Assembly (NCBI GenBank): GCA_002269645.1
Contig: NIVC01001726.1
Span: 149,925-213,924 of the forward strand
Direction of reading: 5' to 3'
Source: Macrostomum lignano
Taxonomy: Eukaryota
Length of the DNA: 64,000 bases
In this document: positions 4,105-57,900 of the stretch, one piece after another
Numbering within the stretch: position 1 is the stretch's first letter
How the letters are laid out: each line of letters begins with the position of its first letter
Notes under the pieces: generated by a model
Told to the model about the DNA's origin: nothing
Databases searched by the model: none
Seen by the model: only the letters and a program-made list of their open reading frames with translations
Position numbers and translations under genes: made by a program

Positions 4105-4883
4105 TTTTAGTATTCAGCCCTTTTACTTTGGTATCTCTGATCAATAGATTGATAGTGCAGTGCAGTTGCGCAATGTTTGAATTAGTTGAAAATTCGAACA
4201 TTATTCAGATTTTTGGCCACTTCCAACACAGAATTGAATATCGGCCTGGTTGTCACAATTAATGTCACAAACTGACATAACAGCAGGAGTTTGGGTGCCC
4301 TTAGACTAGAACAAAATCATGTGCAATGTGCCCTCCGACCAATAAGCCCCCCCCCCACTTTGAAATATGTTCCGACACCGCTGCATGTATCTGTCTTCTA
4401 ACGATTCCTGTAAACAGTGCGATGTACGATTACATACTGTATAGCATTTTATATGTTAAATATGCATTATATAGTAATAGCACATGTACATATCATGTAG
4501 GACCAGAGTTGCTTTCCTAAACCATTGATAAAACATAAGTTAGTTGCATAAATAAGTAAAAAATGCGTACTGTGTATTTATTCGATAAATAATAAAAAAT
4601 TGTTTAATAAACAGTTTTAGCCGCGGTGTACGTGCAGTTCGGCTACCAGACGCGTGCATTGTTGTGTAAGCTAATAAATAAATACATTAATAGATGTGTC
4701 ATTGCATGCTTAAAATAAAAAAGTAGAAATAGATATGACAAAAAATCGCCGCGGTAAGACAGCGTTAGCACTAAAGACTTGCGGTGCGTACGGTATAACA
4801 GATTAGAACACAGCGTGTAACAGATGCGGTGCCTGTCTGGCTCACATGTATAAGCAAGTGGAGTTACTGAGTGTCTGATTGCT

Positions 4884-6659
4884 TTACTGGACTTGAGCAG
4901 TTCCATCAGACACAAGCGGGTCATCCAATTTTGTAGATGCTGTTGTTGCTGCTGCTGCTTCTGCAGAGTCTGATTGTTGCTTCGAGTAATGAAGGGCCGG
5001 TGACGCTGGCTGAGGCGCGTCTGAATTTGTTGATTTGAATTGCACTTTTATAGTTTTAGCGGGTTTGATCTTATTGCCTATAATGACTCCCGCATTTTTT
5101 ATTACTTTGGCTTTTATTATTGACACACTGAGGCATTCCTGACACTAATACTCTGATACTAGACGCTTTCCTGACACTGTTACGCGACACTAGAGGCTTT
5201 CCTGACACTAACACCCTGACGCAATGAGACTTTCCTGACACTAACACCCTGACGCAATGAGACTTTCCTGACACTAACACCCTGATACACTGACTACTGA
5301 TGCCCCTGATACACTGACTACTGATGCCCCTGATACACTGACTACTGATGCTCCTGACACACTGACTACTGATGCCCCTGATACACTGACTACTGATGCC
5401 CCTGATACACTGACTACTGATGCTCCTGACACACTGACTACTGATGCTCCTGACACACTGACTACTGATGCTCCTGACACACTGACTACTGATGCTCCTG
5501 ACACACAGACTACTGATGCTCCTGACACACTGACTACTGATGCTCCTGACACACAGACTACTGATGCTCCTGACACACTGACTACTGATGCTCCTGACAC
5601 ACAGACTACTGATGCTCCTGACACACTGACTACTGATGCCCCTGATACACTGACTACTGATGCTCCTGACACACTGACTACTGATGCCCCTGATACACTG
5701 ACTACTGATGCTCCTGACACACTGACTACTGATGCCCCTGATAAACTGACTACTGATGCTCCTGACACACTGACTACTGATGCCCCTGACACACTGACTA
5801 CTGATGCTCCTGACACACTGACTACTGATGCTCCTGACACACTGACTACTGATGCCCCTGACACACTGACTACTGATGCTCCTGACACACAGACTACTGA
5901 TGCTCCTGACACACTGACTACTGATGCCCCTGACACACTGACTACTGATGCTCCTGACACATTGACTACTGATGCTCCTGATACACTGACTACTGATGCT
6001 CCTGACACACTGACTACTGATGCTCCTGACACACTGACTACTGATGCTCCTGACACACTGACTACTGATGCTCCTGACACATTGACTACTGATGCTCCTG
6101 ACACACTGACTACTGATGCTCCTGACCATACAGACTCTTGTTCCTTCTGACGTGAGAACTTGGGTGTCAAGTGTTTACCGCCCCGCAATGAATTGAAATA
6201 CAAATTTAGCTGCATTCGCACCTGCGTCCGACTGTCGCTCAGCTACGGCCGGTCGCGAGATGCAGAGCCGTTTGCGCAAATAACGAATTTCCATCTGCAG
6301 CAGCTTGTTCTCCTGCAATTATTAGTTTAAAGCTTGTTGAGAATTTAATTTCTCCACAGTAATACCAAACATTCTTTTTAGACTACTGATGCCGCTACTG
6401 AGTAGCATCATGTGCATTTTATGTCTCAGAGTATACGAAACCAAACCTGCGTCAGATCGGCGATCATTCGCTCCATCGCTGCGTCGTTGAGTCGGCGCTT
6501 CTCTCGACTGCGCCTGGCCGCCTCGTTGTTCTTCATCCGTCTGGCCAGGTACTTCGCCTTGTCCGGCCCCTGCTCCTCCTCGGTGTACGTGGCGGCCCCC
6601 TCGCTGGTGTCTACGCTTTGAACATCATCGGCACTTGAAGAAGTTGGCTGAGTTGCCAT
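4884..6659 (-). CDS. nfil3: NFIL3/E4BP4/vrille-like bZIP transcription factor, 146 aa, 3 coding exons
   Basis: Exons 6659-6447, 6312-6222, 5020-4884 (441 nt; phases 0 and 1 consistent; GT-AG). Basic region YLARRMKNNEAARRSREKRRLND and zipper MERMIADLTQENKLLQMEIRYLR resemble the NFIL3/vrille signature KNNEAAKRSREKRRLND. Probable 5'UTR exon ends at the GTGAGT donor near 7107. Confidence 0.85.
5165..6126. repeat. Intronic minisatellite, 24-bp unit CCTGACACACTGACTACTGATGCT, preceded by related 33-bp units
   Basis: Direct reading; lies in the bZIP intron 5021-6221; source of the RSISSQCV / VVSVSGAS artefact ORFs. Confidence 0.95.
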
Positions 6660-6687
6660 CAGCCTGAGGGGATTGAGAAATGATAGC

Positions 6688-7105
6688 TGACAGACTGACT
6701 GACAGACTGACAGACAGACAGACAGACTGACTGACTGACTGACTGACTGACTGACTGACTGACTGACTGACTGACTGACTGCCTGACTGACTGACTGACT
6801 GACTGACTGACTGACTGACTGACTGACTGACTGACTGACTGACTGACTGCCTGACTGACTGACTGACTGACTGACTGACTGACTGACTGACTGACTGACT
6901 GCCTGACTAAATGACTGACTGACTGACTGACTGACTGACTGACTGACTGACTGACTGACTGACTGACTGACTGACTGACTGACTGACTGACTGACTGACT
7001 GACTGACTGACTGACTGCCTGACTGACTGACTGACTGACTGACTGACTGACTGACTGACTGACTGACTGACTGACTGACTGACTGACTGACTGACTGACT
7101 GACTC
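6688..7105. repeat. (GACT)n microsatellite in the 5' intron of the bZIP gene
   Basis: Direct reading; flanked on the minus strand by a GTGAGT donor (~7107) and a CCTCAG acceptor (~6664). Confidence 0.95.
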
Positions 7106-7976
7106 ACTCCACACGATGACAACCAAGCAATCCTGACTGAGTGTATCAATATGGGAACAACTAAAGAGGAACTGCGGGATTCCATGATGACGCATTCTCA
7201 TGCGCTCTCCCTCTTTTAATGTATCAAGCCCGCCCAGCATCCCGCACTCTGTGTTCTGTTCAAATTACATGCATACAACAACATCCAGGCTATAATAAAA
7301 TTAAGCAAAAATATTCCCTTACTGTCGGCTCGGCAGTATCCTAGCCCATGGACGCCTGAAGGATTAAATCTGGACAGGCACCACCTGGGCTCGGTCTAAG
7401 CCAGGCTTTGACTGTGTTTAACTGCCGAAAATGTTTGACAGTTCAGAATTAATTCACATTTTACTACTTAAATTTTTAATAAACCTGTTCCAGAATTCCC
7501 GGTGAGAGATCAGGAATTTGGTGCTAGAAAGCTGAAAACTTTCGGAAAAAATTCAGAGTTTGTGTGCAAATGACTGAGAGTTTCCTGAAAAAAACAGTGA
7601 GCCTTCCAATCCAGATACCGTCTCCCTCTCTAGAAGTCCCTGGCCCGCCTAGCGACGCGACCCATAGGAATTAGAAATTAGAACTGAGGGAATATTGGTG
7701 TAGAATCGGATTCAGCGTGAGAAACGGATGTAGGAAACGGCTGCATGGCTAACTTTGGCCGGGGGAGGGGGTTCCAGCGAAACCGCGCGGAGGTCAGAAG
7801 GTGCGCAGGAAGTGGAGCACGCAAGCCGCACACATACGCTGCTTCACCTCAAAAAGTTTACAATGTTTTTTCACCACAAAAGTCGCCCCTTGTATATAGA
7901 TAATAATAGCAGCTGAGGCTGTGACAACTGCAAGCTGGGCTCAAACAAAGGACGAGGAGCCATGCAGGTCGCGATT

Positions 7977-9760
7977 GTTACGCAATCGATCCGATTGTAA
8001 AAAACGGCCCCCGCATTGCCTCATCAAATATTATCCAGCAGACAGAGAGATTCTCACTTTTTATTTTATGTCATCGGCAAGTCAACAATCCATGCCTGCT
8101 TATTATACTCAACTGTCTCGCAGACTTAATTATTTGGGGAACCCGGGGAGTCCGGGCTCACCCAGTTCTCGCCCGGCAAAAGACGCAAAGGCACAAAGAC
8201 TGTAAAAAACTTGACAGAAAAAAAGCAATTTTTCTACTTTTGCTTTTTTCTATAAAGATGCAAGACTTCTTTCTGTGAATCTATCTACATAAAAAGCTCA
8301 AATCCCCACACTGTGGGAAGTGCATGACGTCATATGAGGTCTTTGTCTGGAACGGGCTTGCTTGATTTTTCTCCGGGAGAAGCTTATTTGGCAGAAAAAA
8401 TCACTTGAATTTATTATTTAACTTTTTTCACTTAATCAGAAAAATGACAGCAGGCAAGTCTCATTAAGTTTCCTTGGTCGCAAAAAAATATTTTCAAATC
8501 TTATTACTGATTTTTTGTCTCCAAGAGAGTAGGGGTAAACACTGTCAAGAGACTTCTCCCCCGTTTTTTAGGTCTCACAGATTACGTAATGCCTTTCTGG
8601 GCCTGTCCTCTCTCTCTCTCCTAGCCGGCTGAGGTCATCCCGTGTCAAGACAGGCTCTATTTTTCTCCCTTAGCTGCGCCTCCCTTGCCTCATCTGACCG
8701 GCTGCATGGAGAGCTCTACTAATCCCTGGAGACGACCTGCATGGCAGCATGAGGGTTGCGTAACTCTCATTCGCAATAGGAGGTCGGCCACTCGAGGTCA
8801 TCTAGGCACTTCTTTTTCCTGGAATCTTTCTTTTTTGCGACTGCCTCGTTCTCCGTTTTAATTGCGTCTAATCTATTGTAGCATAGTGGGCGGGAGCCGA
8901 TCCATATGTTATCGATAGCTAAAGATTTCCCCTGCCGCTCTGCAGTGGCGGCGCAAACTACGCTCGTGTGGTCAAACTGCATTGAAAACTGCCACATGAG
9001 GCTGTTGTACGTGTGATTCTACAGTTAATCCGGCTGATTCCTGTGGCCTCTTCTCTTCAGACTGCCGTGATCTGCTTACCCCAGGATTGCTAATATAGCC
9101 TACATCAATGATGAAGGAATAGAATGGATGGCTAATCTAGCCTAAATCAGTAAGGAATAGAATGGATTGCTAATCTAGCCTACATCAATGAAGGAATAGA
9201 ATGGATTGCTAATCTAGCCTACATCAATGAAGGAATAGAATGGATTGCTAATCTAGCCTACATCAGTGAAGGAATAGAATGGATTGCTAATCTAGCCTGC
9301 ATCAGTGAAGGAACAGAATGGATTGCTAATCTAGCCTACATCAATGATGAAGGAATAGAATGGATTGCTAGTCTAGCTGACATCATCCGAGTACGTACCG
9401 GTGTTCGTGTTGCAGAGTCCCAGATGCAGCAGTGCTTTAATCAGCAGAGGCAGGCATATTTTTGCCTTCGCTTAAGGAATCTGCGATGAGGAAGGTGGGA
9501 GTGCCGGTGCAGTCGGGATGACAGGTAGAGGTGGGCATAATAAACAAGTGACCTCTTTTCCTCTGTTCCACACCCCGCGTTGCCCAGCCAATCAGCTTTG
9601 AGCCGTGACCGACGCCAATTGCAAAGCATTGCGTAATCACTTTGGCCCAAAAAACTCTCAATGCTTTTTCTCGTGACCTCAATCAATCCAGACCCCTAGA
9701 GAGTAAAATCTGTGCCGGCCTACAGAAATACAGAAATTGCAGCGTTGAAGGTTGCGCAAT
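7977..9760. promoter_or_regulatory. Cluster of PAR/C-EBP-type bZIP sites plus a CRE, upstream of the NFIL3-like gene
   Basis: RTTRCGYAAY matches: GTTACGCAAT 7977, ATTACGTAAT 8581, GTTGCGTAAC 8755, ATTGCGTAAT 9628, GTTGCGCAAT 9751; palindromic CRE ATGACGTCAT 8324. Confidence 0.6.
9085..9385 (+). repeat. 39-42 bp minisatellite family A (GGAATAGAATGGATTGCTAATCTAGCCTACATCAGTGAA), copy 1
   Basis: Direct reading; same unit at five other loci in the window. Confidence 0.95.
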
Positions 9761-9965
9761 CATTATTGGCGCATATCTATCCATGCTTTGTCGAGCGAGT
9801 AAAACTGTCGCTGCCAAACTGACTTGGATGCCGGATAACTGCCAGCGGTTCCTTCTACAGCCACTTGGCTCTTGACCTGCCTGTCAGTAGGTAATTGCTG
9901 CTGAACAATGGACTACAGCTGCCTCTTTGTCCGATTGGGTAGGCAGGGACCCCAGGCATTGGCAC

Positions 9966-10020
<55 letters not shown>

Positions 10021-10026
10021 GTGTCT

Positions 10027-10122
<96 letters not shown>

Positions 10123-10140
10123 TTGTTTTTTGTCTGTCTG
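9966..10140. repeat. (TCTG)n/(TG)n compound microsatellite
   Basis: Direct reading. Confidence 0.95.
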
Positions 10141-10361
10141 TACCTAAGTTTACGTGACACAAATATATTTTTTCGTTGAATTTAGTTTTTCGTCAGTTGA
10201 TATGTATATTTGAAAGATTCCAATCAATGCGAAAATACGATAAATGGGGTTCGCAAGTTTAAAACATGCTTGCAGTCAATTGCAGATGCTTTCTTTAAAA
10301 CTCCTAGAAGTTTCCAAGAAATGCACATTTTGGTCTCCTGGCCCGGAGAAGACAGGAGAGT

Positions 10362-12246
10362 TCAGCGCAGCGACAGAGTGGACTGCTGACCCCCGCAGTA
10401 AGCCAGGCCTCGGCGGCGCTCTTCCCATTCACCCGGGTCGCTGGGCCACCGGCGGCTCAGCCGGCGCTGCCCCGCATAGCAACAGCCGTCCTCTGCCAGC
10501 AGGCGCTCAACGGCAGCCCGCAGCCTCGTCGCTGTCGGGCAGGCCAAGCCCAGGAGTCCTTGAACTGGCCTGCCGGTGTCCTTGTCCAAGCCGGCGAACT
10601 GCAGCACGAGGCAGCCGGCGTTCACAACGCCGAACCCGACGATGCACCTCGGCGGGCAGACCAGCCGGCTGGTTGAATTGACGTCGATGAGCTCCAGGCC
10701 GGCCCGGGTGCTCAGGCGGAGGCCGTGCAGGTGACCCGGCGGCAGGCCGAGCATTTGAGCGGTGAAATTGCGGACCGGCCGGACTGTCCACACTGTGCAT
10801 GCTGGCTGCTCGTCTGGCGCGGCAGCTGAGCAGATGTCGGGGGAGATGAGCACCTGAAAGCGGTGGTGATGAGCTGGTTGAGTTAACAGTAGCTACTCTT
10901 ATTAAAAAGGAATAATAATAAATAAATAAATGGTAACAGTTTATTAGAATAATTTTACATTGGAGAATAAATATTTAAAAAATTAACTATGATTGCTCAT
11001 ACATAGTAATAGTACTAATAGTTATATGGTAAAAATAGTAACAGTAATCATAACAAAAAATAATGTATATAATACGTTAGCGCAGTGTTTTAAAAAATGA
11101 GCAAGTATTCGCAACTTTAAATACAAATATATGCAATTTAATAAAATCTTCAATAAAAAACGAAGGTAAAACAACAGCATGATTCATGCACAAAAAAATT
11201 AAAGCTGTTATCAAATATAACGTTAAAAGAGAAACAAATTAATATTTTCTTTTTGTTTCTTAATTTGCTTAAAACAATTATTTTGTTTATCAGAATTTGT
11301 ATTCAAATCTCTGTTCTTTGCGTTTTTTATAAATTACTTTTTAAATTTAAATAATACAATGCAATTATATTCTATAGATTTGAAGGTATTTTATATTTTG
11401 TATATTATATTCTAATTTAATAGCGCAGCTCTTTTTGAGGCTTTCACATTACCAATTCCAGAACCAGAAAAAAGAAGTATAATTGTTTAACCTTGTTGAA
11501 TGACTGTTTGACTGCCTTAACAGCCTCAATTTGCACAATGTTTCACTTTCTTCTTGGCGATTGCCATTCAATAACTACAACTTTAGAGCACCTATATCCC
11601 CCTAGTTTGGGAGACAGAAAGTTGTACTTCACAAATTGAATCTGGTTCTAGAACCAGAACTAAAACAAGCAATTTGAAAATGCCATTCGAAAGGTCAAAA
11701 ATGCAGCAAAAAATCAGAAGAAAATATGCTCACCTTAGCAACAGCACCGCAGGCGGCCGCCTCGATCAGGCAGCACAGTTTGTCGATCTGCCCGGCACCG
11801 CTGCTGTACAAGCTTAGCCAGCGCCGGCCAATCAGCGGCGCCGGCCGGCCGCAGCGTAGTCTGAGGGCGAAGACGCCGGCTCCAATTTCGACAAGCCGCA
11901 TCCTCGGTCGCCGCGGCAGCGACAGCTGCACTTCCGAAGCATCCTCGTCAAGCTGCCAGCCGTCGCCACATCGGCGGCATTTTTTTCGACGCGCCTGGCA
12001 AAAAAGTCGACATCCTCCAGCCGACTGTCGTTCGAAGGTCGCCGATATGTCGCCGCCGAGTCGACGGAATCGACGCGCTTCGCGCAGTCCCGGCAGCGGC
12101 GGCGGCGGAGTCAGTCGAAGTTTCGGCGTCGCCCTGCGGCCGCTGAGCACGACGCTGGCTCGGAGCAGCTGGCAACTGGCGAGGTCGGCACTGCAGGAGG
12201 GCCTCCCGACTCGTCCCCGCCTTGCGTAGACCAGCGCGGCGTCCAT
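10362..12246 (-). CDS. Divergent PH + PTB-like adaptor protein (Dok/IRS/FRS2-like), 2 exons
   Basis: Exon 12246-11734 (ATG; AAG|GTGAGC donor) joins in phase 0 to exon 10853-10362 (TTTCAG| acceptor). Both exons are GC-rich islands around an AT-rich intron. Exon 2 (TVRPVRNFTAQMLGLPPG..LRLSTRAGLELID..PPRCIVGFG..LVLQF..LRAAVERLL) recalls the IRS-type PTB fold; family assignment is by eye only. Confidence 0.5.
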
Positions 12247-13009: not shown

Positions 13010-13248
13010 GTAAATAATAACTATGATAATAATCGATTACACCTGCCCCAATTGGGCCAGATGTGCAACCGACAGCTCAGCCGCTGCGTACGGCTGTTCA
13101 GTCCACAGACTGAGGGACAGTGTTGGGAACTGAAGCAAGAGTTCAGTGTCTTGCTCAAAGGACACAAATTGTTCCAAGTGGGTGGAGAATCGAACCCCCG
13201 ACCTTTCAGTCGTGAGTCCAAAGCTCATAACCACTAGGCTTACAACCT
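13010..13248 (-). mobile_element. tRNA-derived SINE family 1 (CORE-SINE-like)
   Basis: Minus strand: A-box-like TAGTGGTTA, B-box GGTTCGATTC, then GTGTCCTTTGAGCAAGACACTGAAC resembling the CORE-domain start, and a TTA-rich tail; related copy at 58367. Confidence 0.7.
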
Positions 13249-13473: not shown

Positions 13474-14016
13474 TCAACGCTTGGCATTGCGTTTACGATG
13501 CCTTAGAAAGTTATGCCAGAGCTTGCGGCATTCTACTGGCATCTTGCAGAGGTCCGAGAGGGCCGTGATGCCCAGAGTGCGGCGGTCCACTTCCGTAGCC
13601 GGGCAGTCGAGAAGGACGTGCTGGAGGTTCTCTGGTTCGTCACCGCACCTCCGGCATGTCGGATCCGCTGTCCAGCCAATACGATGGGTATTCACTCGCA
13701 GCCTTGCGTGTTTTCCTGAGCGGAATTGTGCGTAGTCCGCCCGCTCGGCTCTCGTCCAGGTGGCCGTCCGCTGTCGGTTGGATTTGCTGCGCACCGCGGC
13801 GTTGCCCAGTGTTGTAATTGACGCGGCGGCGAGTAGTCGCTGATGCGAACGCGACGTCACTTGATTTACAGTCGCATCAGACATCTGCTCGCGAGCTGGT
13901 AATTGCCGGTCTTGATTGTTAAGACTCGACCCAGCGGTAGTCTGATTTAAAAAATCAATGATTTTTGACTGTCGACCGCGAGACCTGCTCGACTTTGGCG
14001 TAGGCGCTCCAGCCAT
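13474..14016 (-). mobile_element. 180-aa ORF carrying the C-terminal CCHC zinc knuckle of non-LTR retrotransposon ORF2
   Basis: YAQFRSGKH..L..HRIG..PTCRRCGDEPENLQHVLLDCP = C-x2-C-x8-H-x4-C preceded by the AQLRTGH-like motif of I/Jockey/R1-type LINE ORF2 C-termini; no RT or RNase H upstream in the window. Confidence 0.7.
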
Positions 14017-15043: not shown

Positions 15044-18000
15044 ATGGAGCAGCTCAATCTGCTGGAGGCAGCAACAGAAACTGTGCAAACTTTTGATCGA
15101 ATCACCTGGGACACCTTGGCAACGGCCCAGCAACCACAGCAACCGCCACCAGTTCCTGCATGCAGCTATGCGCAAGACCTTGTTGCCCCAGCTTGCCAGC
15201 TTCATCTAGGACGGACCCAGCTTCCAGCAGTGGGATCGATGGAGCAGCTCAACCTGCAGCTGGAGCATTTTGTCGCTGTCCAAAATCAGGAGCTGGCCAA
15301 GCCGCCGTATTCCTACATTGCTCTGATCAGCATGGCTATCACTGCTCAGCCTGAGCACAGGGCCACCCTCAGCGGTATCTATCAGTTCATCAAGGACCGG
15401 TGCGTATCTAGCCTGCATGATATGAAGGAATAGAATGGATTGCTAATCTAGCCTACATCAGTGAAGGAATAGAATGGATTGCTAATCTAGCCTACATCAG
15501 TGAAGGAATAGAATGGATTGCTAATCTAGCCTACATCAGTGAAGGAATAGAATGGATTTCTAATCTATCAATCGAGGATAAAATGGATCGCTAATCTAGT
15601 TCTAATACAGTTAATGTGTCTTTGCTCTGAAAGCAACTCCCTCTTTATTGAATGCTTCGATCTCACTTCGCTTTCTGAGTAATTTGGGGGTGCAGAAGGT
15701 CGCAGCTTTAAAATAGAAATAGCTGTCTATTCGAGGCACTCAGAAAGAACAGCTGCAAATGCGCAAGCCTACTCAATGCCAGCCTACTTTGCGCGAATTA
15801 GTGGCCTTACAGCAGCACATTATACTGCTGGGTCTGCAACTCAGTTAGAAAGCGCAAAACTCGAATAATGAAAAAAATACCCCCATCATCTTCACTTTGA
15901 GGCGTCATTTCTGACAGGTGCGTCAGTTGATGAATGTCACACAAGCCGGAGTACAATAGCCTGAGAGCAGGGTGGGTTCGGGTTTATCGTGATAAAGTGG
16001 AAACCACAGCAGACCGCCTTTTTTAAGAGACGATACCAAACTGTTTTGCTAAAGTTGGCAAATATTGCCGCGGTTGCTTCCACACCTCTCTTGGCAATTA
16101 AGAGGCCGCCTGCTAGAAGCTGAGACGCTCCTTTGACGATATACCGCTTCATAGACGTTTCGAATGAATCAAAGTGCTTAATTAGTTAAATTAGGCAAAA
16201 CGTTGGTTCAACGAACACTATCAGGGTCTATTCTCTGATAGTGTTCAAGTAGTGCTTGGGTTCCAGAAGTAGAAAAATGAATCTAAAGTACATTAGATAT
16301 GGAATTAGATCAGAGATAAGAATGTACTCAGGATCAGAGATAAGATAGTACTCAGGATCAGAGATAAGATAGTACTCAGGATCAGAGATAACAATGTACT
16401 CAGGATCAGAGATAAGATAGTACTCAGGATCAGAGATAAGAATGTACTCAGGATCAGAGATAAGATAGTACTCAGGATCAGAGATAAGATAGTACTCAGG
16501 ATCAGAGATAACAATGTACTCAGGATCAGAGATAAGAATGTACTCAGGATCAGAGATAAGATAGTACTCAGGATCAGAGATAAGATAGTACTCAGGATCA
16601 GAGATAACAATGTACTCAGGATCAGAGATAAGATAGTACTCAGGATCAGAGATAAGATAGTACTCAGGATCAGAGATAAGAATGTACTCAGGATCAGAGA
16701 TAAGAATGTACAATGGATCAGAGATAAGAATGTACAATGGATCAGAGATAAGATAGTACTCAGGATCAGAGATAAGATAGTACTCAGGATCAGAGATAAG
16801 AATGTACTCAGGATCAGAGATAAGATAGTACTCAGGATCAGAGATAAGATAGTACTTAGGATCAGAGATAAGAATGTACAATGGATCAGAGATAAGAATG
16901 TACTCAGGATCAGAGATAAGATAGTATCAGGATCAGAGATAAGAATGTACTCAGGATCAGAGATAAGAATGTACTCAGGATCAGAGATAAGATAGTATCA
17001 GGATCAGAGATAAGAATTTACTCAGGATCAGAGATAAGAATGTACTCAGGATCAGAGATAAGAATGTACTCAGGATCAGAGATAAGATAGTATCAGGATC
17101 AGAGATAAGAATGTACTCAGGATCAGAGATAATAATGTACAATGGATCAGAGATATTAATGATATGAAAATGACACAGATCCACTGCACTTGACCGACTC
17201 TGGCCCGCAGCTTCCCTTACTATCGGGACAACAAGCAGGGCTGGCAGAACTCCATCAGGCACAATCTGTCATTGAACGAGTGCTTCGTGAAGGTGCCGCG
17301 AAGCGATTCAACTAAGGCGGGCAAAGGCAGCTACTGGACGCTGCACCCGGAGGCCTACAGCATGTTCGACAATGGCAGCTACCTGCGCAGGCGGAAGCGG
17401 TTCAGACGGCAGCGTCAGGACAAGACGGTCACAGAGGAGGGAGCGAGGAAGTCGAACGACAAGGCGGTTTGTTTTTTTGATATTGCCACTGCTGGTTATG
17501 AAAGTCAACAATAATAAGAATAAGATTCACAGGAAGGCACCCTGGCGACATGGTCCCACAGCCAGCGCTGAGGCAATTCTGCCCGTTCCGCTGACTCCTG
17601 AGCTGACGCAGGCACAGCACTCATACTCACATGCTCACACAGGGTGTACACTTTCTAATCGTCAGGCATGTACACTCTCTGTGTCTTGGGGGTTGGAGCA
17701 CATTGGTGTGAATCGCATGACAAGGCCCCTGCAAATTCTTATAGACGCACAAGCCCCAAATTGATGTGACCGAGTACGGAATTGAACCAGAGGGGTCGTG
17801 GCGCGCGAGTCTGGCGCTTTACCGCTCTGCCACTGTCATCACCGTCAGATTCAATTTAGATGTCATTCGGTCTGGGCTATAGATATCCAATTGATAGTTC
17901 TTCTTCAGGAATAAATATGCTTGAATTTTTTTAGGAAGCATCGTCTGCCGCGTCGGACGCGATGGAACCGGCCGCTGCAACCACACCGATGCCGACGAGC

Positions 18001-19930: not shown

Positions 19931-26900
<6,970 letters not shown>

Positions 26901-52068: not shown

Positions 52069-54800
52069 TCACTTGTCCCTGGTGTGCCTGGTGACCGTGG
52101 ACACCCCATCCACCAGCTTAGTCTTGAACAGCACGTTGGCATTGTTGAACATGCCGTCCTTGAGCGAGACTACAATAAACTGAGACTGGCCGAAGTTCTC
52201 CTTAATCAGCTGGCCAATGTTCTGGGTGTGGCTCAGGTCAAGGGCGGCGTCGACTTCGTCAAGGATGTAAATTGGCGCCGGCTTGAACAGCAGCAGGGCC
52301 AGGATGAGCGACAGGGCCACCAGGGAGCGCTGGCCGCCGCTCAGCTCGCTTAGCGACTCCTTCCACTGCTGGCCGAACCCGATGCGAAACTCGATGCCCT
52401 CCAGCACCGACCGGCCCGCGGAGGGCACCAGCTTGGCGTTGGCGCCTGGCAGCATGGTGGAGAACAGCTTGCCGAAGTCTGCGTTCACCTGCGGCAGTGC
52501 ATGAATTGGCTGGCGTTCAACAGCTGGAGAGCTGGGATGGAGTTGGGGATGAATGGGGAGCTGGGATGGATATGAGGATAAAATGAGGAGCTGGGGCGGG
52601 GATGGGGATAAAATGGGAAGCTGGGACGGGAATGAGGATAAAATGAGGAGCTGGGGCGGGGATGGGGATAAATTGGGAAGCTGATACGGGAATGAGGATA
52701 AAATGGGAAGCTGGGACGGGGATGGGGATAAAATAGGAAGCTGGGCGGGGATGGGGATAAGATGGAGAGCTGGGGCGGGGATGAGGATAAAATGGGGAGC
52801 TGGACGGCGATGGGGATAATGCGGGGCTAAGATGGATATGAGGATAAAATGGGGAGCTGGGGCGGGGATGGGGATAAAATGGAGAGCTGGAGCGGGGATG
52901 AGGATAAAATGGGAAGCTGGGACGGGAATGAGAATAAAATGGGAAGCTGGGACGGGGATGGGATAAAATGGGAAGCTGGGACGGGAATGAGGATAAAATG
53001 GGAAGCTGGGCGGGAATGAGGATAAAATGGGAAGCTGGGGCGGGGATGGGGATAAAATGGGAAGCTGGGACGGGGATGGGGATAAAATGGGAAGCTGGGA
53101 CGGGGATGGGGATAAAATGGGAAGCTGGGACGGGAATGGGGATAAAATGGGAAGCTGGGACGGGAATGGGGATAAAATGGGAAGCTGGGACGGGAATGGG
53201 GATAAAATGGGAAGCTGGGACGGGAATGAGGATAAAATGGGAAGCTGGGACGGGGATGGGGATAAAATGGGGAGCTAGGATGAATATGAGGATACACTGA
53301 GGATATGGGGTGGAGATGGGGATAAAATGGGGAGTTCGGATGGGTATGTAATAAAATAGAAAGCGACTCAAACCTTTTTGTAAGCAGTCATCAGAGCTTC
53401 ATTTTTCTTCTTGTCCAGCTCGTCAATAATGCCCTGTATCTTGGCCTTGTCAGTCAGCACAATGTCCCGCTTGCCAACCAGATCAGCGTATTGCTGCTCG
53501 GCAGTGGTCAGCATGTTCATGGCTCGCATGTTCACAGACTTGCCCAATCGCTCCTTGCGTTCCTCCAGCTTGGTTAGCCGGGCTCGCTGCTCCTTGGGAT
53601 TGTTGCCCTGCGATGGGTGCGGTTGGGGAAATAGCGGGGCTTTAGTAGCAGAATCTGCCATCTGACCCTGAAGTAGCCGAATCTGCCATCTGACCCTGAA
53701 GTAGCCGAATCTGCCATCTGACCCTGAAGTAGCCGAATCTGCCATCTGATCCTGAAGTAGCAAAATCTGCCATCTGATCCTGAAGTAGCCGAATCTGCCA
53801 TCTGATCCTGAAGTAGTTTAACTTGTCACCTGAGGCTACCATCTGAACCGGCAATCCGGCACTTACCCTGGTAACTATCTGAATCTGCCAATTATGAAGA
53901 ATCAGGGATTAAAGATTGGGAAGATTCATGGTTAAGAAGATTGGGAAGAATTCGGGATTAAAGATTGGGAAGAATCTGGGATTAAAGATCGGGAAGAATC
54001 TGGGATTTGAAGATCGGGAAGAATCTGGGATTTGAAGATTGGGAAGAATCTGGGATTTAAAGATTGGGAAGATTCATGGTTAAGAAGATTGGGAAGAATT
54101 CGGGATTAAAGATTGGGAAGAATCTGGGATTAAAGATCGGGAAGAATCTGGGATTTGAAGATCGGGAAGAATCTGGGATTTGAAGATCGGGAAGAATCTG
54201 GGATTTGAAGATCGGGAAGAATCTGGGATTTGAAGATAGGAAAGAATCTGGGATTAAAGATTGGGAAGAATTCGGGATTTAAAGATTGGGAAGAATCTGG
54301 GATATGGAGATATGCGGAGACTAGGATTTGAAGGCCCGTGAATCCATGCACTTGTCGATCGGTCTCACCTGGAAGTCGAAATGACCGCCGGGCTGATTAA
54401 AGTGCCGCTTCTCCGACTCGATCCACGGGTGAGAGGCGAGCAGCTCGTTGACTTTGTGCTGCGCATCCGCTGCCTCCTTGGCCTGGTCGGCCAGCTGGTG
54501 CTGCAGGTTGGCCAGCCGCAGCTCTCGCTGGCTGACCTCCGACTGCAGCGCCTTCGCCTGCTCCTCCAGATCCCGGATAGCCTGATTGCGGGCCTTGATC
54601 TCGGCCCGTTTCTCTTCCAGCTGCCGCTTTGCCTCATCCAGGGCCTGCTTGAGCGCCTCCGCCTCGGCCTGGGGATCCAGGGGTTGTTATAGAGTTAATT
54701 AGAGAGATTAGAGAGCTTCCGGAGTACTCAAAGCGCTTAAGCTTCGATAGATCAGACGAGTATGGCAGGACAATACACTGCACAAAATAAATAGATAGCG

Positions 54801-54832
<32 letters not shown>

Positions 54833-54929
54833 GGCAGACAGACAGACAGACACAGGCAGGCAGGCAGGCAGGCAGACAGACAGACAGACAGACAGACGGA
54901 AAGACAGACAGACAGACAGACAGACGGAA

Positions 54930-54986
<57 letters not shown>

Positions 54987-57900
54987 CACTAGCAAGCGAC
55001 TCACCCGCTTCTCCTGAACCTCTCCAGAGCGGGCCTCGACGGACTCCTTGGCGGCGGCGATTTGCTCTTCGAGGCTGGCGGCCTCCTTGCGCAACTCCTC
55101 GATCTCCAGCTGCAGGGTGTCGTGCTGCGGCTGCCAGTTTTCCACATCGGCTCGTCGCGCCTCCCGTTCGTGTTGGGCCTTGGCTATGCGAGCCTGGAGG
55201 GGGCGATTGGGGTTCAAATTGAACCACTTTGAATTCAAGTCCCGATGCAAATAATGGGAGTAGAGCCCACGTAGAGCTTGATTGTTAGATTAACAATCCA
55301 TTGTATTCCTTCATCATTGATGTAGGCTAGATTAGCAACCCATTCTATTCCTTCATCATTGATGTAGGCTAGATAGCAATCCATTCTATTCTTTCATCAT
55401 TGATTTAGGATAGATTAGCAATCCATTCCATTCTTTCATCATTGATTTAGGATAGATTAGCAATCCATTCTATTCTTTCATCATTGATGTAGGCTAGATT
55501 AGCAATCCATTCTATTCTTTCATCATTGATGTAGGCTAGATTAGCAATCCATTCTATTCCCTCATTTATTGATGTAGGCTAGATTAGCAATCCATTCTAT
55601 TCCTTCATCATTAATGTAGGCTAGATTAGCAATCCATTCTATTCTATCACTGATGTGGGCTAGATTAGCAGCCCATTCTCTTTCTTCATCATCATCTTTG
55701 AGATTCCTTTTTTCATCTCCTATTGGCTAGACTAGCATTCTCACCTGCGCCGCCTTCATCTCTCGCTCCTGCACAGCGGCGGCATCCTTGACCTGCTCGG
55801 CCAGACTGGCCTCCCGTTCGCGCAGCCGCTTCAAGGCGGCGTTGGCCTCGGCTGCTGCAGTCTGCTCGCTGTCCAGCTCAGCCTGCAGCTCCTCCAGGTG
55901 CTTGGCCAGCTGCTGGTGATCCGTGTTGCCAATTCGCTGCTCCAGCAGAGCCAGCTCGTGCCGCTTCTGGTCCAAGTCCTGCCGCAGCTGCTGGTAGCGG
56001 CCGGCCGAGGCCTCCGCCTGCCTGACCGATTCGGCCACTTCGGCCAGCTGTCGCCGCGTCGCCTCGGCGCGCTCCCGCAGCTGGCGCAGCTTGGCGGCTT
56101 TCAGCAGCGTCGGCTCGCGGCTGCCGCGAAAACCGCCGGAGAGAGTGCCCTCGGGCTGTACACCTCGCCCTCCAGGGTCACCGCCCGGCGGCGGATGTCC
56201 CGATGGAAGGCCACCTGCGGGTGAGGATGGCCATGATCCCTTCAGGCTTTAGATCATTTAGATGGCGCAGTATGAGGATCTGGGAGGGTCAAAGAGATGC
56301 CCTGTATGAGAGTCTCATAGAGATGACCCTAATGACGATCTGGGAGGTCATAGAGATGACCCTAATGACGATCTGGTAGGTCATAGAGATGACCCTAATG
56401 ACGATCTGGGAGGTCATAGAGATGACCCTAATGACGATCTGGGAGGTCATAGAGATGACCCTAATGACGATCTGGGAGGTCATAGAGATGACCCTAATGA
56501 CGATCTGGGAGGTCATAGAGATGACCCTAATGACGATCTGGGAGGTCATAGAGATGACCCTAATGACGATCTGGGAGGTCATAGAGATGACCCTAATGAC
56601 GATCTGGGAGGTCATAGAGATGACCCTAATGACGATCTGGGAGGTCATAGAGATGACCCTAATGACGATCTGGGAGGTCATATGACCCTAATGACGATCT
56701 GGGAGGTCATAGAGATGACCTTAATGACGATCTGGGAGGTCATAGAGATGACCTTAACGACCTTCTGGGAGGTCATAGAGATGACCTTAACGACTTTCTG
56801 GGAGGTCATAGAGATGACCTTAAAGACTTTCTGGGAGGTCGTAAAGATGACCTTAATGACGATCTGGGAGGTCATAGAGGTGACCTAAATGGCGATCTAA
56901 GAGGATCAGAGATAACCTCAACAGTATGAGAAAAGACCATAGACATAAACCCAGGAAACGCACCTTCCTGCCGGCCTCATCATCCTGCACCACAAAGCTG
57001 GCGCCGAACACAAACTGAGCGGCGGCCTCAACGGATTTGTCCCGCCTAACCAGATCCAGGGCCGGATAAGCTCGGCCTTGTCCGGCCACCTGGACAGCCA
57101 AATCGGCCTGGTGTTTAGGCAGGCACCTGGCCGAGATCTTATTCAACGGTATAAACGTTGTCTTCTGCCTGAGCTGGCCCCGCTGCAGCAGCAGCTTGGC
57201 CGTGGCCTCGGTGTCGACCACAACGTTGAACAGCTTGGCGCCGGCGGTGACCTCAAGGGCCACGGCGAATTTCTCGTCAACAGCTTCGAGCAGCTGGCAT
57301 ACGGGTCCGAGCACGCGGCGGCGATCGAACCGCGGCTCTGGGTCCGTGTAGTCGAATCCCAGCCGGGGATTAGCGGATTGGAATTCCTCCAGATGGCGGC
57401 CCGTCTCATGCAGCTCGCGTTGCAGGGCCGACTGGCGCTCGAGCAGTCGCTGCTCGGCGGCCTCGTCGAAGCCGGTCTCGGCCAGCTGCTTCTGCGGGGG
57501 GGGGGGTGGAGGGCGAGTCACCGCGGTGACGGCTAGCCGCCTGCCTGACTGTCACTCTTCTATCGAATATCTGCCACTCTTCTATGCACTGCCTGTCACT
57601 CTTCTATACACTGCCTGTCACTCTTCTATCGAATATCCGTCACTCTTATATTAACTGCCTGTCAGTCTACTATGTACTGCCTGTCATCTTCTATTAACTG
57701 CCTGTCACTCTTCTATTAACTGCCTGTCAGTCTACTATGTACTGCCTGTCACTCTTCTATTAACTGCCTGTCAGTCTACTATGTACTGCCTGTCACTCTT
57801 CTATGCACTGCCTGTCACTTTTCTATTAACTGCCTGTCAGTCTACTATGTACTGCCTGTCACTCTTCTATGCACTGCCTGTCACTCTTCTATTAACTGCC

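What the first reader, a model, noticed from the sequence alone, without database searches (positions are those of the whole stretch)
7977..9760. Dense cluster of PAR/NFIL3/C-EBP sites upstream of an NFIL3/vrille-like gene: candidate autoregulatory enhancer
Seen: five exact RTTRCGYAAY 10-mers (7977, 8581, 8755, 9628, 9751) and a perfect CRE (8324) in 1.8 kb of non-coding DNA, 1.3-3.1 kb upstream of the bZIP ATG. Under uniform composition the pattern has probability 16/4^10, or ~0.03 expected in 1.8 kb. By eye I saw only two others in the window (4165, 48089); this was not an exhaustive scan. Known: NFIL3/E4BP4/Vrille and PAR factors bind RTTAYGTAAY, and in the Drosophila clock Vri and Pdp1 compete for such sites. 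Inference: a bZIP feedback module (circadian, stress or regeneration) controlling this gene.
Basis: partly seen in the sequence, partly recalled or inferred. Interest (0 to 1): 0.7.

Follow-up and report, generated by a model that had tools for sequence, protein, structure and literature searches.

The report
Flatworm NFIL3-like gene's bZIP-site cluster
Five perfect binding sites for C/EBP/PAR/NFIL3-type bZIP proteins, far more than chance allows, lie in 1.8 kb just upstream of a small NFIL3-like gene of the flatworm Macrostomum lignano; this is most likely a control region through which that protein family, probably including the gene's own product, regulates the gene, which is a familiar kind of feedback circuit and is still untested here.

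Summary
No other pattern of the same shape clusters like this. The sites share no flanks and are not repeat copies. The window is from Macrostomum lignano or a very close relative. On the minus strand, 1.3 kb away, lies a two-exon, 116-aa bZIP gene. Its best structural relative is human NFIL3, and every NFIL3 DNA-contact residue is conserved. Published ITC data show that NFIL3 binds all three site types present within 20-fold of its optimum. However, four of the five sites fit the C/EBP consensus RTTGCGYAAY, and only one is a canonical D-box. Both families could therefore bind, and "autoregulatory" remains an inference. Mammalian NFIL3 is reported to bind and repress its own CREB-driven promoter. 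An abalone NFIL3-like gene has a similar cluster at its annotated start, whereas Trichinella and marmot relatives do not. The TSS, expression, chromatin state and cross-species conservation could not be tested here. Verdict: a real, statistically strong, probably functional bZIP module, and a new member of a known kind.

The parts
7977..7986 (.). Site 1, GTTACGCAAT (ATTGCGTAAC on the other strand). This is a hybrid PAR/C-EBP octamer, TTACGCAA = TTGCGTAA.
   Evidence: Exact match. It is the TTGCGTAA type, for which human NFIL3 has Kd 0.18 uM. It lies about 80 bp upstream, in the minus-strand sense, of a TATATA at 7893-7898.
8325..8332 (.). Palindromic CRE, TGACGTCA.
   Evidence: It is the only copy in the window, with 0.82 expected, so it is not enriched on its own.
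8581..8590 (.). Site 2, ATTACGTAAT, a perfect palindromic D-box and the NFIL3 optimum.
   Evidence: TTACGTAA is the highest-affinity NFIL3 site (Kd 0.042 uM) and is also bound by C/EBPbeta (0.018 uM).
8755..8764 (.). Site 3, GTTGCGTAAC, a hybrid site that fits the C/EBP consensus.
9628..9637 (.). Site 4, ATTGCGTAAT, a hybrid site that fits the C/EBP consensus. CCAAT boxes lie at 9588 and 9615.
9751..9760 (.). Site 5, GTTGCGCAAT, a palindromic C/EBP-type site. A reverse CCAAT lies at 9765.
   Evidence: NFIL3 binds TTGCGCAA with Kd 0.81 uM and C/EBPbeta with 0.069 uM.
4165..4174 (.). Outlying sixth site, GTTGCGCAAT, 2 kb 3' of the bZIP stop codon.
   Evidence: Of the nine TTRCGYAA cores in the window, seven lie within 4166-9759 around this gene.
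6447..6659 (-). bZIP gene, coding exon 1 (ATG at 6659). It encodes an acidic N-terminus and the basic region KNNEAARRSREKRRLND.
   Evidence: ORF and tblastn. The GT donor is at 6446.
6313..6446 (-). Intron of 134 nt (GT...AG).
   Evidence: Splicing keeps the leucine zipper in frame, and the spliced protein aligns without gaps to human NFIL3.
6175..6312 (-). bZIP gene, coding exon 2 plus the stop codon. The total product is 116 aa. The exon contains a coding TTGCGCAA at 6272.
6687..7108 (.). (CTGA)n microsatellite directly 5' of the ATG. A candidate cis- or trans-splice acceptor, cccctcag|GCTGATG, lies at about 6664-6671 on the minus strand.
   Evidence: TRF and the sequence view. The role of the acceptor is an inference.
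7893..7898 (.). TATATA, a candidate TATA box for a minus-strand TSS near 7865.
   Evidence: Inference only, with no transcript data.
9084..9385 (.). 39-bp minisatellite (7.6 copies) that splits the cluster. It belongs to a dispersed family.
   Evidence: TRF. Other arrays lie at 15406, 20421, 23299, 41627 and 55286.
9965..10141 (.). (CTGT)n microsatellite marking the far edge of the unique intergenic block.
10362..12246 (-). Upstream neighbour: a putative two-exon gene on the minus strand (exon 2 at 10362-10853, exon 1 at about 11735-12246). Its 3' end bounds the intergenic region.
   Evidence: ORFs. It has no relatives among solved structures. The gene model is unverified.

Best explanation
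The 1.8-kb segment is a genuine cis-regulatory module. It is a homotypic cluster of five perfect, high-affinity sites for bZIP dimers of the C/EBP-PAR-NFIL3 superfamily, plus one CRE. It controls transcription of the adjacent minus-strand gene, which encodes a 116-aa NFIL3-family bZIP protein in Macrostomum lignano. The gene's own product is one of the proteins that occupy these sites. Because it is little more than a bZIP domain, it most likely acts by competing with activating family members (C/EBP- or PAR-type factors, and CREB/ATF at the CRE). That would give negative feedback and pulse-like or rhythmic expression, as reported for mammalian NFIL3. Shown here: the cluster, its statistical significance, its uniqueness within the window, the gene model and the family assignment of the protein. 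Inferred: binding in vivo, the target gene, the sign of regulation and the biological context.
For: Statistics: 5 observed against 0.025 expected in the unique intergenic DNA (P 8e-11). RTTRCGYAAY is the only one of 2304 same-shape patterns to reach 5 hits in 1.8 kb. All five cores have the extended R...Y flanks. Only perfect sites are enriched. The sites are not repeat copies, the region is not a CpG island (CpG o/e 0.68 against 0.64 for the window), and there is no Rfam RNA. Seven of the nine TTRCGYAA cores in 64 kb surround this one gene. The gene is NFIL3-type (PDB 8k89, E 3.9e-11) and has the DNA-contact and dimer-interface residues that mutagenesis showed to be required for binding. Human NFIL3 binds TTACGTAA, TTGCGTAA and TTGCGCAA at 0.042, 0.18 and 0.81 uM, so the hybrid sites bind better than the textbook D-box TTATGTAA at 0.52 uM. 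Precedent: CREB induces Nfil3, and NFIL3 binds and represses its own promoter while competing with CREB and C/EBPbeta. In M. lignano, 1-2.5 kb of upstream DNA reproduces tissue-specific expression, so regulation is mostly proximal. Parallel: in the abalone NFIL3-like locus, the densest 150-bp window of TTRYRYAA sites in 37 kb (4 sites, including two TTACGCAA) sits exactly at the annotated gene start.
Against: Four of the five sites fit the C/EBP consensus better than the PAR/NFIL3 D-box. C/EBPbeta binds TTACGTAA and TTGCGCAA more tightly than NFIL3 does, so the sites do not point to this protein in particular. The protein lacks the REFIP-KKD extension and any C-terminal repression domain found in relatives, and its acidic N-terminus might activate rather than repress. 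The TSS is unknown and no transcript evidence for the gene could be obtained. The protein is absent from the searched collections. No orthologous or homeologous DNA was reachable, so conservation is untested. The comparative pattern is not general: the whelk is weak, and Trichinella and the marmot NFIL3-like gene have none.
Confidence: 0.5

Rival explanations
1. The cluster is a functional enhancer or promoter of the NFIL3-like gene, but it is read by a different family member, a C/EBP-type (or PAR-type) activator. This is a feed-forward C/EBP-to-NFIL3 connection with no meaningful self-binding.
For: The C/EBP consensus RTTGCGYAAY accounts for 4 of the 5 cluster sites and 6 of the 7 window sites, whereas the strict D-box accounts for one. 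C/EBPbeta binds TTGCGCAA about 12-fold more tightly than NFIL3 does (0.069 against 0.81 uM).
Against: NFIL3 still binds every site type present within 20-fold of its optimum, and the best site (8581) is the NFIL3 optimum. NFIL3 and C/EBP share targets by competition in mammals, so exclusive C/EBP use would be unusual. Whether M. lignano encodes a C/EBP was not established here.
Confidence: 0.3
2. The cluster is a real bZIP-bound module but serves another gene. Candidates are the FoxC-like gene 5.3 kb away on the plus strand, the minus-strand neighbour whose 3' end abuts the cluster, or an unannotated transcript. Alternatively, it arrived as part of a mobile or repeated element that happens to carry such sites.
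For: Enhancer-target assignment from sequence alone is uncertain. The unique block is bracketed by microsatellites in inverted orientation and contains a dispersed minisatellite. More than half of the M. lignano genome is repetitive. CCAAT boxes around 9588-9769 could mark a separate promoter.
Against: The nearest coding start is the bZIP gene's (1.3 kb), and further cores lie inside and 3' of that gene. Regulation in M. lignano is mostly proximal. No second copy of any unique part of the block exists in 64 kb. The Fox gene is separated from the cluster by another gene and a LINE fragment.
Confidence: 0.13
3. The cluster has no function and is a chance or mutationally generated concentration of palindromic CpG-centred decamers.
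For: There is no direct functional evidence. The pattern was defined after the sequence was seen.
Against: P is about 1e-10 locally. It is a unique outlier among 2304 equivalent patterns. The flanks also conform. The cluster lies beside a gene of exactly the family that binds the motif.
Confidence: 0.05

Closest known systems
Mammalian Nfil3 (E4BP4) locus: CREB-induced, self-repressing NFIL3 circuit
   Same: An NFIL3-family bZIP gene has binding sites for its own family plus a CRE in its 5' region. NFIL3 is reported to bind its own promoter, repress itself and compete with CREB and C/EBPbeta (review PMC4629104). The DNA-contact residues of the protein are identical (PMC10941009).
   Different: The flatworm protein has 116 aa, against 462 aa for human NFIL3 (from my own knowledge), and has no recognisable repression domain. 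There are five perfect sites spread over 1.8 kb. No binding or expression data exist. The protein is similar only across the bZIP domain (best HMMER E 1e-14), so orthology is unproven.
C/EBP response elements and C/EBP gene autoregulation (consensus RTTGCGYAAY)
   Same: Four of the five sites match this consensus exactly. C/EBPalpha and C/EBPbeta bind both TTGCGCAA and TTACGTAA. It is established knowledge, not tested here, that C/EBP genes regulate their own promoters through such sites.
   Different: The adjacent gene is not a C/EBP. It has Ala, not Val, at the discriminating basic-region position (NFIL3 A87 / C/EBPbeta V285), and it matches NFIL3 about 6 orders of magnitude better in E-value.
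Drosophila vrille / Pdp1 V/P-box loop and vertebrate D-box (PAR bZIP versus NFIL3) clock output
   Same: An activator and a repressor of the same bZIP superfamily compete at RTTAYGTAAY-like sites. The window protein has the NFIL3/Vri basic-region signature NNEAAxRSREKRR.
   Different: Only one site (8581) is a canonical D-box. No E-box CACGTG lies in the region. No clock connection is known for this gene or this animal. This resemblance is a lead from memory, not a test.
Haliotis cracherodii 'atf-2-like' (NFIL3-like, double-bZIP) gene promoter
   Same: A lophotrochozoan NFIL3-family gene has a tight cluster of the same class of octamers (TTGCATAA, TTACATAA and two TTACGCAA) at its annotated start.
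   Different: The sites are packed into 110 bp at the start and are mostly not CG-centred. The protein has 573 aa and two bZIP domains. It too is uncharacterised.

Membership tests
NFIL3/E4BP4/Vrille subfamily of bZIP proteins (the adjacent gene) | Basic-region signature NNEAAxRSREKRR(L/Y)ND, with DNA-contact residues R80, N83, N84, A87 and R91 (human numbering) | tested here: met
   The window protein has RRMKNNEAARRSREKRRLND. The alignment to PDB 8k89 shows all five residues conserved, plus zipper E111 and N112 (residue roles from PMC10941009).
NFIL3/E4BP4/Vrille subfamily of bZIP proteins (the adjacent gene) | Closer to NFIL3 than to any other bZIP family | tested here: met
   PDB phmmer gives NFIL3 at 3.9e-11, C/EBPbeta at 2.4e-5 and CREB at 5e-3. 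The named top HMMER hits are NFIL3 (Trichinella), atf-2-like (Haliotis) and 'NFIL3 like protein' (Marmota). PAR proteins were not compared directly.
NFIL3/E4BP4/Vrille subfamily of bZIP proteins (the adjacent gene) | Conserved extension N-terminal to the basic region (REF[IM]P[DE]xxKD..YW) and a C-terminal effector (repression) region | tested here: not met
   The relatives carry RKQREFIPE.KKD.YWEKRRKNN, whereas the window protein has TEEEQGPDKAKYLARRMKNN. The protein ends about 30 residues after the zipper. An upstream coding exon cannot be excluded, because the reading frame is open 5' of the ATG.
D-box / PAR-NFIL3 response element (RTTAYGTAAY) | Exact match to RTTAYGTAAY | tested here: not met
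   Only 8581 matches. The other four sites have a TTGC half-site. They remain measurable NFIL3 binding sequences (Kd 0.18-0.81 uM).
C/EBP response element (RTTGCGYAAY) | Exact match to RTTGCGYAAY on either strand | tested here: met
   Sites 7977(-), 8755, 9628 and 9751 match. Site 8581 does not, but TTACGTAA is bound by C/EBPalpha and C/EBPbeta.
Homotypic cluster of transcription-factor binding sites (cis-regulatory module) | Several sites for one TF class within about 1-2 kb of non-coding, non-repeat DNA, significantly above the composition-corrected expectation | tested here: met
Autoregulatory element | The gene's own product binds the sites | not testable with these tools
   The only support is inference from conserved contact residues and human NFIL3 affinities.
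Autoregulatory element | The sites lie in accessible chromatin of expressing cells, and mutating them or removing the protein changes the gene's transcription | not testable with these tools
   ATAC/multiome and RAMPAGE data for M. lignano exist but are not held here.
Conserved non-coding element | The sites are retained in orthologous DNA of related species | not testable with these tools
   No Macrostomum DNA is in the searchable collections.

The most novel reading that the evidence does not exclude
The 116-aa protein is a natural bZIP-only 'micro-NFIL3'. It has no effector domain and works purely by occupying a shared battery of C/EBP/PAR sites, including five on its own gene. That would make a self-limiting pulse generator, analogous to ICER or the LIP isoform of C/EBPbeta. 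It would gate a C/EBP/CREB-driven programme, such as wound or regeneration response or daily timing, in a flatworm, a lineage in which I found no published work on this bZIP subfamily.
Probability: 0.15. Interest if true: 0.55.

Novelty: new member of a known kind. Interest (0 to 1): 0.4.

Why it matters
If the module is functional, it gives a compact and very clean entry point into bZIP network logic in a regenerating flatworm that can be made transgenic. It offers five perfect sites, one CRE and one tiny gene. It would show that self- or cross-regulation of NFIL3-family genes through C/EBP/PAR-type sites, known from mammals, also operates in Platyhelminthes. The abalone parallel suggests it may extend more widely in Lophotrochozoa. 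It also illustrates that the textbook distinction between D-box and C/EBP site does not identify the binding protein. By the published affinities, hybrid TTGCGTAA sites bind NFIL3 better than the classical TTATGTAA. The circuit type itself is well known, so the finding is useful rather than surprising.

Tried and rejected
Repeat-family origin of the sites is rejected within the window. The flanks do not align, and BLAST finds no second copy of the unique DNA.

Low-complexity, CpG-island or composition artefact is rejected.

A gradient of weak sites is not present. One-mismatch variants occur at the background rate.

The CRE as an independently significant feature is rejected, with 1 observed against 0.82 expected.

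A structured RNA or tRNA in the region is rejected, with no Rfam hit.

A paralogous bZIP elsewhere in the window is rejected, since tblastn finds none.

Conservation test, attempted by four routes:
- A protein word-index search with the bZIP gave only a bat protein.
- Exact-protein look-ups of the GPCR ORF, the bZIP exon-1 ORF and the M. lignano Fox protein were not on record.
- The metagenome scan returned only distant relatives at 31-44% identity.
- Logan contigs for two relatives were transcripts without promoters.

A general rule that all NFIL3-family genes carry such clusters is not supported. The abalone locus does, the whelk locus is weak, and the Trichinella and marmot NFIL3-like loci do not.

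I considered identifying the upstream neighbour gene, but it has no relatives in the PDB.

I considered using the last large protein search to look for M. lignano C/EBP or PAR genes. I did not run it, because the top-120 listing would be swamped by vertebrate proteins and the result would not decide between the explanations.
Full report
**1. The observation**

An exhaustive scan of both strands finds exactly seven matches to RTTRCGYAAY, at 4165, 7977, 8581, 8755, 9628, 9751 and 48089. Dinucleotide-preserving shuffles of the window give 0.36 expected, and none of 100 shuffles reached seven. The palindromic CRE TGACGTCA is at 8325-8332, one base off the stated position. It is the only copy in the window, but 0.82 is expected, so it is not significant by itself.

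The 8-bp core TTRCGYAA occurs nine times in 64 kb. Seven of those lie between 4166 and 9759, around one gene.

**2. Is it more than chance?**

The window is 43% tandem repeat (27,845 bases masked by TRF) and moderately CpG-depleted (o/e 0.64). The cluster region has o/e 0.68, so it is not a CpG island.

I took only the 2554 bp of unique intergenic DNA (7109-9083 and 9386-9964) and ran 20,000 dinucleotide shuffles.
- The 10-mer is expected 0.025 times and occurs 5 times (Poisson P 8e-11).
- The 8-bp core is expected 0.15 times and occurs 5 times (P 6e-7).
- Independently, all five cores carry the R and Y flanks (P about 1e-3).

Because the pattern was chosen after looking at the sequence, I scanned every palindromic 10-mer of the same degeneracy shape, 2304 patterns in all, on the masked window. 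RTTRCGYAAY is the only one with five hits in any 1.8 kb. The next best have three, and most of those are low-complexity patterns.

One-mismatch variants occur at the background rate (14 against about 13 expected) and none lies in the cluster. The enrichment is therefore confined to perfect sites.

**3. Not a repeat**

The 70-bp contexts of the seven sites share nothing beyond the motif. BLAST of 7100-10200 against the whole window finds other copies only of a 39-bp minisatellite (9084-9385) and of the (CTGT)n array at 9965-10141. The depth at every motif is zero.

The unique block is bracketed by microsatellites in inverted orientation. Such arrays are everywhere in this window, so I read that as coincidence. 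No Rfam family matches anywhere in the window.

**4. Organism and gene**

A forkhead exon pair at 15.0-17.5 kb is 99% identical to a Macrostomum lignano protein, UniRef A0A1I8HL26. The window therefore comes from this regenerating free-living flatworm or a very close relative.

The bZIP gene is on the minus strand.
- Coding exon 1 runs from 6659 to 6447.
- A 134-nt GT...AG intron follows.
- Exon 2 runs from 6312 to 6178, followed by the stop codon.

The product has 116 residues: an acidic N-terminus, the basic region RRMKNNEAARRSREKRRLND and a short zipper. Against all solved structures the best match is human NFIL3 (8k89, E 3.9e-11). C/EBPbeta follows at 2.4e-5 and CREB at about 5e-3. In that alignment the residues that the NFIL3 structure paper identifies as DNA contacts (R80, N83, N84, A87, R91) and as needed at the dimer interface (E111, N112) are all conserved.

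A full HMMER search of 1.84 billion representative proteins gives 545 hits, the best at 1e-14. All of them match only across the bZIP domain. The named top hits are NFIL3 (Trichinella), 'atf-2-like' (Haliotis) and the small mammalian 'NFIL3 like protein'. So the protein belongs to the NFIL3 family by its DNA-binding domain, but it is divergent. It lacks the REFIP-KKD extension and any C-terminal effector region. It also has no detectable ortholog in the collections.

**5. The 5' region of the gene**

A (TCAG)n microsatellite sits directly 5' of the ATG. A good acceptor, cccctcag|GCTGATG, lies at about 6668, and the reading frame stays open upstream of the ATG. An upstream exon is therefore possible. 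So is trans-splicing, since 38.8% of M. lignano genes are trans-spliced.

A TATATA at 7893-7898 lies about 80 bp downstream (minus-strand sense) of site 7977. Three CCAAT boxes interleave with sites 9628 and 9751. The TSS is unknown.

**6. Who could bind?**

Published ITC values for the human proteins (PMC10941009):

| Site | Kd NFIL3 (uM) | Kd C/EBPbeta (uM) |
|---|---|---|
| TTACGTAA | 0.042 | 0.018 |
| TTGCGTAA | 0.18 | not measured |
| TTATGTAA | 0.52 | not measured |
| TTGCGCAA | 0.81 | 0.069 |

The cluster contains one TTACGTAA site (8581), three TTGCGTAA-type sites (7977, 8755, 9628) and one TTGCGCAA site (9751). Every site is thus within 20-fold of the NFIL3 optimum. Three of them bind NFIL3 better than the textbook D-box TTATGTAA.

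The signal is nevertheless carried by the C/EBP consensus. RTTGCGYAAY fits four of the five cluster sites and six of the seven window sites. The strict D-box RTTAYGTAAY fits only 8581. The sequence alone cannot say whether the NFIL3-like product, a C/EBP or a PAR protein is the physiological binder. All are plausible, and in mammals they compete for the same sites.

**7. Precedent and comparison**

A review of NFIL3 states that phosphorylated CREB activates Nfil3. It also states that NFIL3 represses CREB and C/EBPbeta targets by competition, and that NFIL3 binds its own promoter to repress itself (PMC4629104). The primary paper was not held. This is the architecture proposed here.

To see whether other NFIL3-family genes look similar, I fetched four genomic loci.
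- **Abalone (Haliotis cracherodii):** the only strict 10-mer in 37 kb lies 10-19 bp upstream of the annotated gene start. The densest 150-bp window of the relaxed octamer TTRYRYAA (four sites, two of them TTACGCAA) is exactly at that start.
- **Whelk (Babylonia):** a TTGCGTAA lies 200 bp upstream and a GTTACGTAAT lies in the first intron, with no overall enrichment.
- **Trichinella:** only two TTGCATAA octamers about 1 kb upstream.
- **Marmot NFIL3-like gene:** none.

Two of four distant metagenomic relatives have one 10-mer 0.6-1 kb upstream of the bZIP exon. The parallel is therefore suggestive, strongly so in abalone, but it is not a universal hallmark.

**8. What could not be done**

No Macrostomum DNA is in the searchable collections. 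ATAC/multiome data and transcript-boundary tracks for M. lignano do exist and would settle several points quickly.

**9. Verdict**

The best reading (confidence about 0.5) is a functional homotypic cluster of C/EBP/PAR/NFIL3-class sites that regulates the adjacent NFIL3-like gene. In this reading the gene's own bZIP-only product competes there with activating relatives, giving negative feedback.

The main rival (about 0.3) is the same module read only by a C/EBP- or PAR-type factor. Less likely rivals are another target gene or a repeat-borne origin (about 0.13) and no function at all (about 0.05).

The circuit type is known from mammals, so this is a new member of a known kind. It is a clean, readily testable prediction in a transgenic-capable flatworm, of moderate interest.

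Noticed in passing
window 9084-9385, 15406-15567, 20421-20961, 23299-25154, 41627-42138, 55286-55692: A dispersed minisatellite family (core GGATTGCTAATCTAGCCTACATCA..GAAGGAATAGAAT, with periods of 39, 42, 109 and 170 bp) occurs six times in 64 kb, often in introns or intergenic DNA. Around the one array examined (9084-9385) the flanks have no other copy in the window. One array splits the bZIP-site cluster.
   Followed up: partly
whole window: 43% of the window (27.8 kb) is tandem repeat. This includes 1-2 kb (CTGT)n/(TCTG)n arrays (25554-26638, 38955-40954) and many 18-42-bp minisatellites. A 35-copy 24-bp array (5281-6126) lies directly 3' of the bZIP gene.
   Followed up: partly
window 6687-7108 and 9965-10141: The unique 2.9-kb intergenic block that holds the cluster is bracketed by (GACA/CTGA)n and (CTGT)n microsatellites in inverted orientation (up to 88% complementary over 51 nt). 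This is probably coincidental, given how common these arrays are here.
   Followed up: partly
window 5217 and 5250 (33-bp repeat 5121-5293): Two copies of a 33-bp tandem repeat 3' of the bZIP gene carry TGACGCAAT, a CRE/C-EBP hybrid half-site combination. The other copies have TGACACAAT.
   Followed up: no
window 7790, 8631, 8794, 9549(-), 9674(-); 7741, 7960(-), 8702, 8737; 9588, 9615, 9765(-): Other short motifs are modestly over-represented within the cluster region. GAGGTCA (a nuclear-receptor-type half-site) occurs 5 times. CTGCATGG occurs 4 times. Three CCAAT boxes interleave with sites 9628 and 9751. None survives multiple-testing correction on its own.
   Followed up: partly
window 15044-15400 and 17212-about 18300 (+): A FoxC-like forkhead gene with an intron inside the forkhead domain. 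It is 99% identical to M. lignano UniRef A0A1I8HL26, which identified the organism. It lies 5.3 kb from the cluster on the other strand.
   Followed up: partly
window 13474-14016 (-) and about 13130-13230: The C-terminal tail of a non-LTR retrotransposon ORF2-like protein, identified by eye from the ORF translation. Next to it is a tRNA-like stretch (possibly a SINE) that ARAGORN does not call.
   Followed up: no
window 10362-12246 (-): A putative two-exon, GC-rich, Arg-rich gene directly upstream of the cluster, with no relatives among solved structures. Long ORFs on both strands make the model uncertain.
   Followed up: partly
L005 9916-10033 (Haliotis cracherodii, JAJLRC010000004.1): The abalone NFIL3-like ('atf-2-like') gene has TTGCATAA, TTACATAA and two TTACGCAA octamers within about 120 bp spanning its annotated start. 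This is the densest such window in the 37-kb locus.
   Followed up: partly
proteins P0002-P0016: Many invertebrate relatives of this protein carry two bZIP domains: an N-terminal NFIL3-type domain and a C-terminal KCRxNRR-type domain. The flatworm protein has only the first.
   Followed up: no
window 48089-48098 and 55087-55094: The only strict site far from the bZIP gene (GTTACGCAAT at 48089) lies in intergenic DNA between a GPCR gene and SMC2. The core at 55087 lies within the span of minus-strand ORFs (54634-55250) in the 52-60 kb stretch I took by eye to be SMC2, so it is probably a coding coincidence.
   Followed up: no
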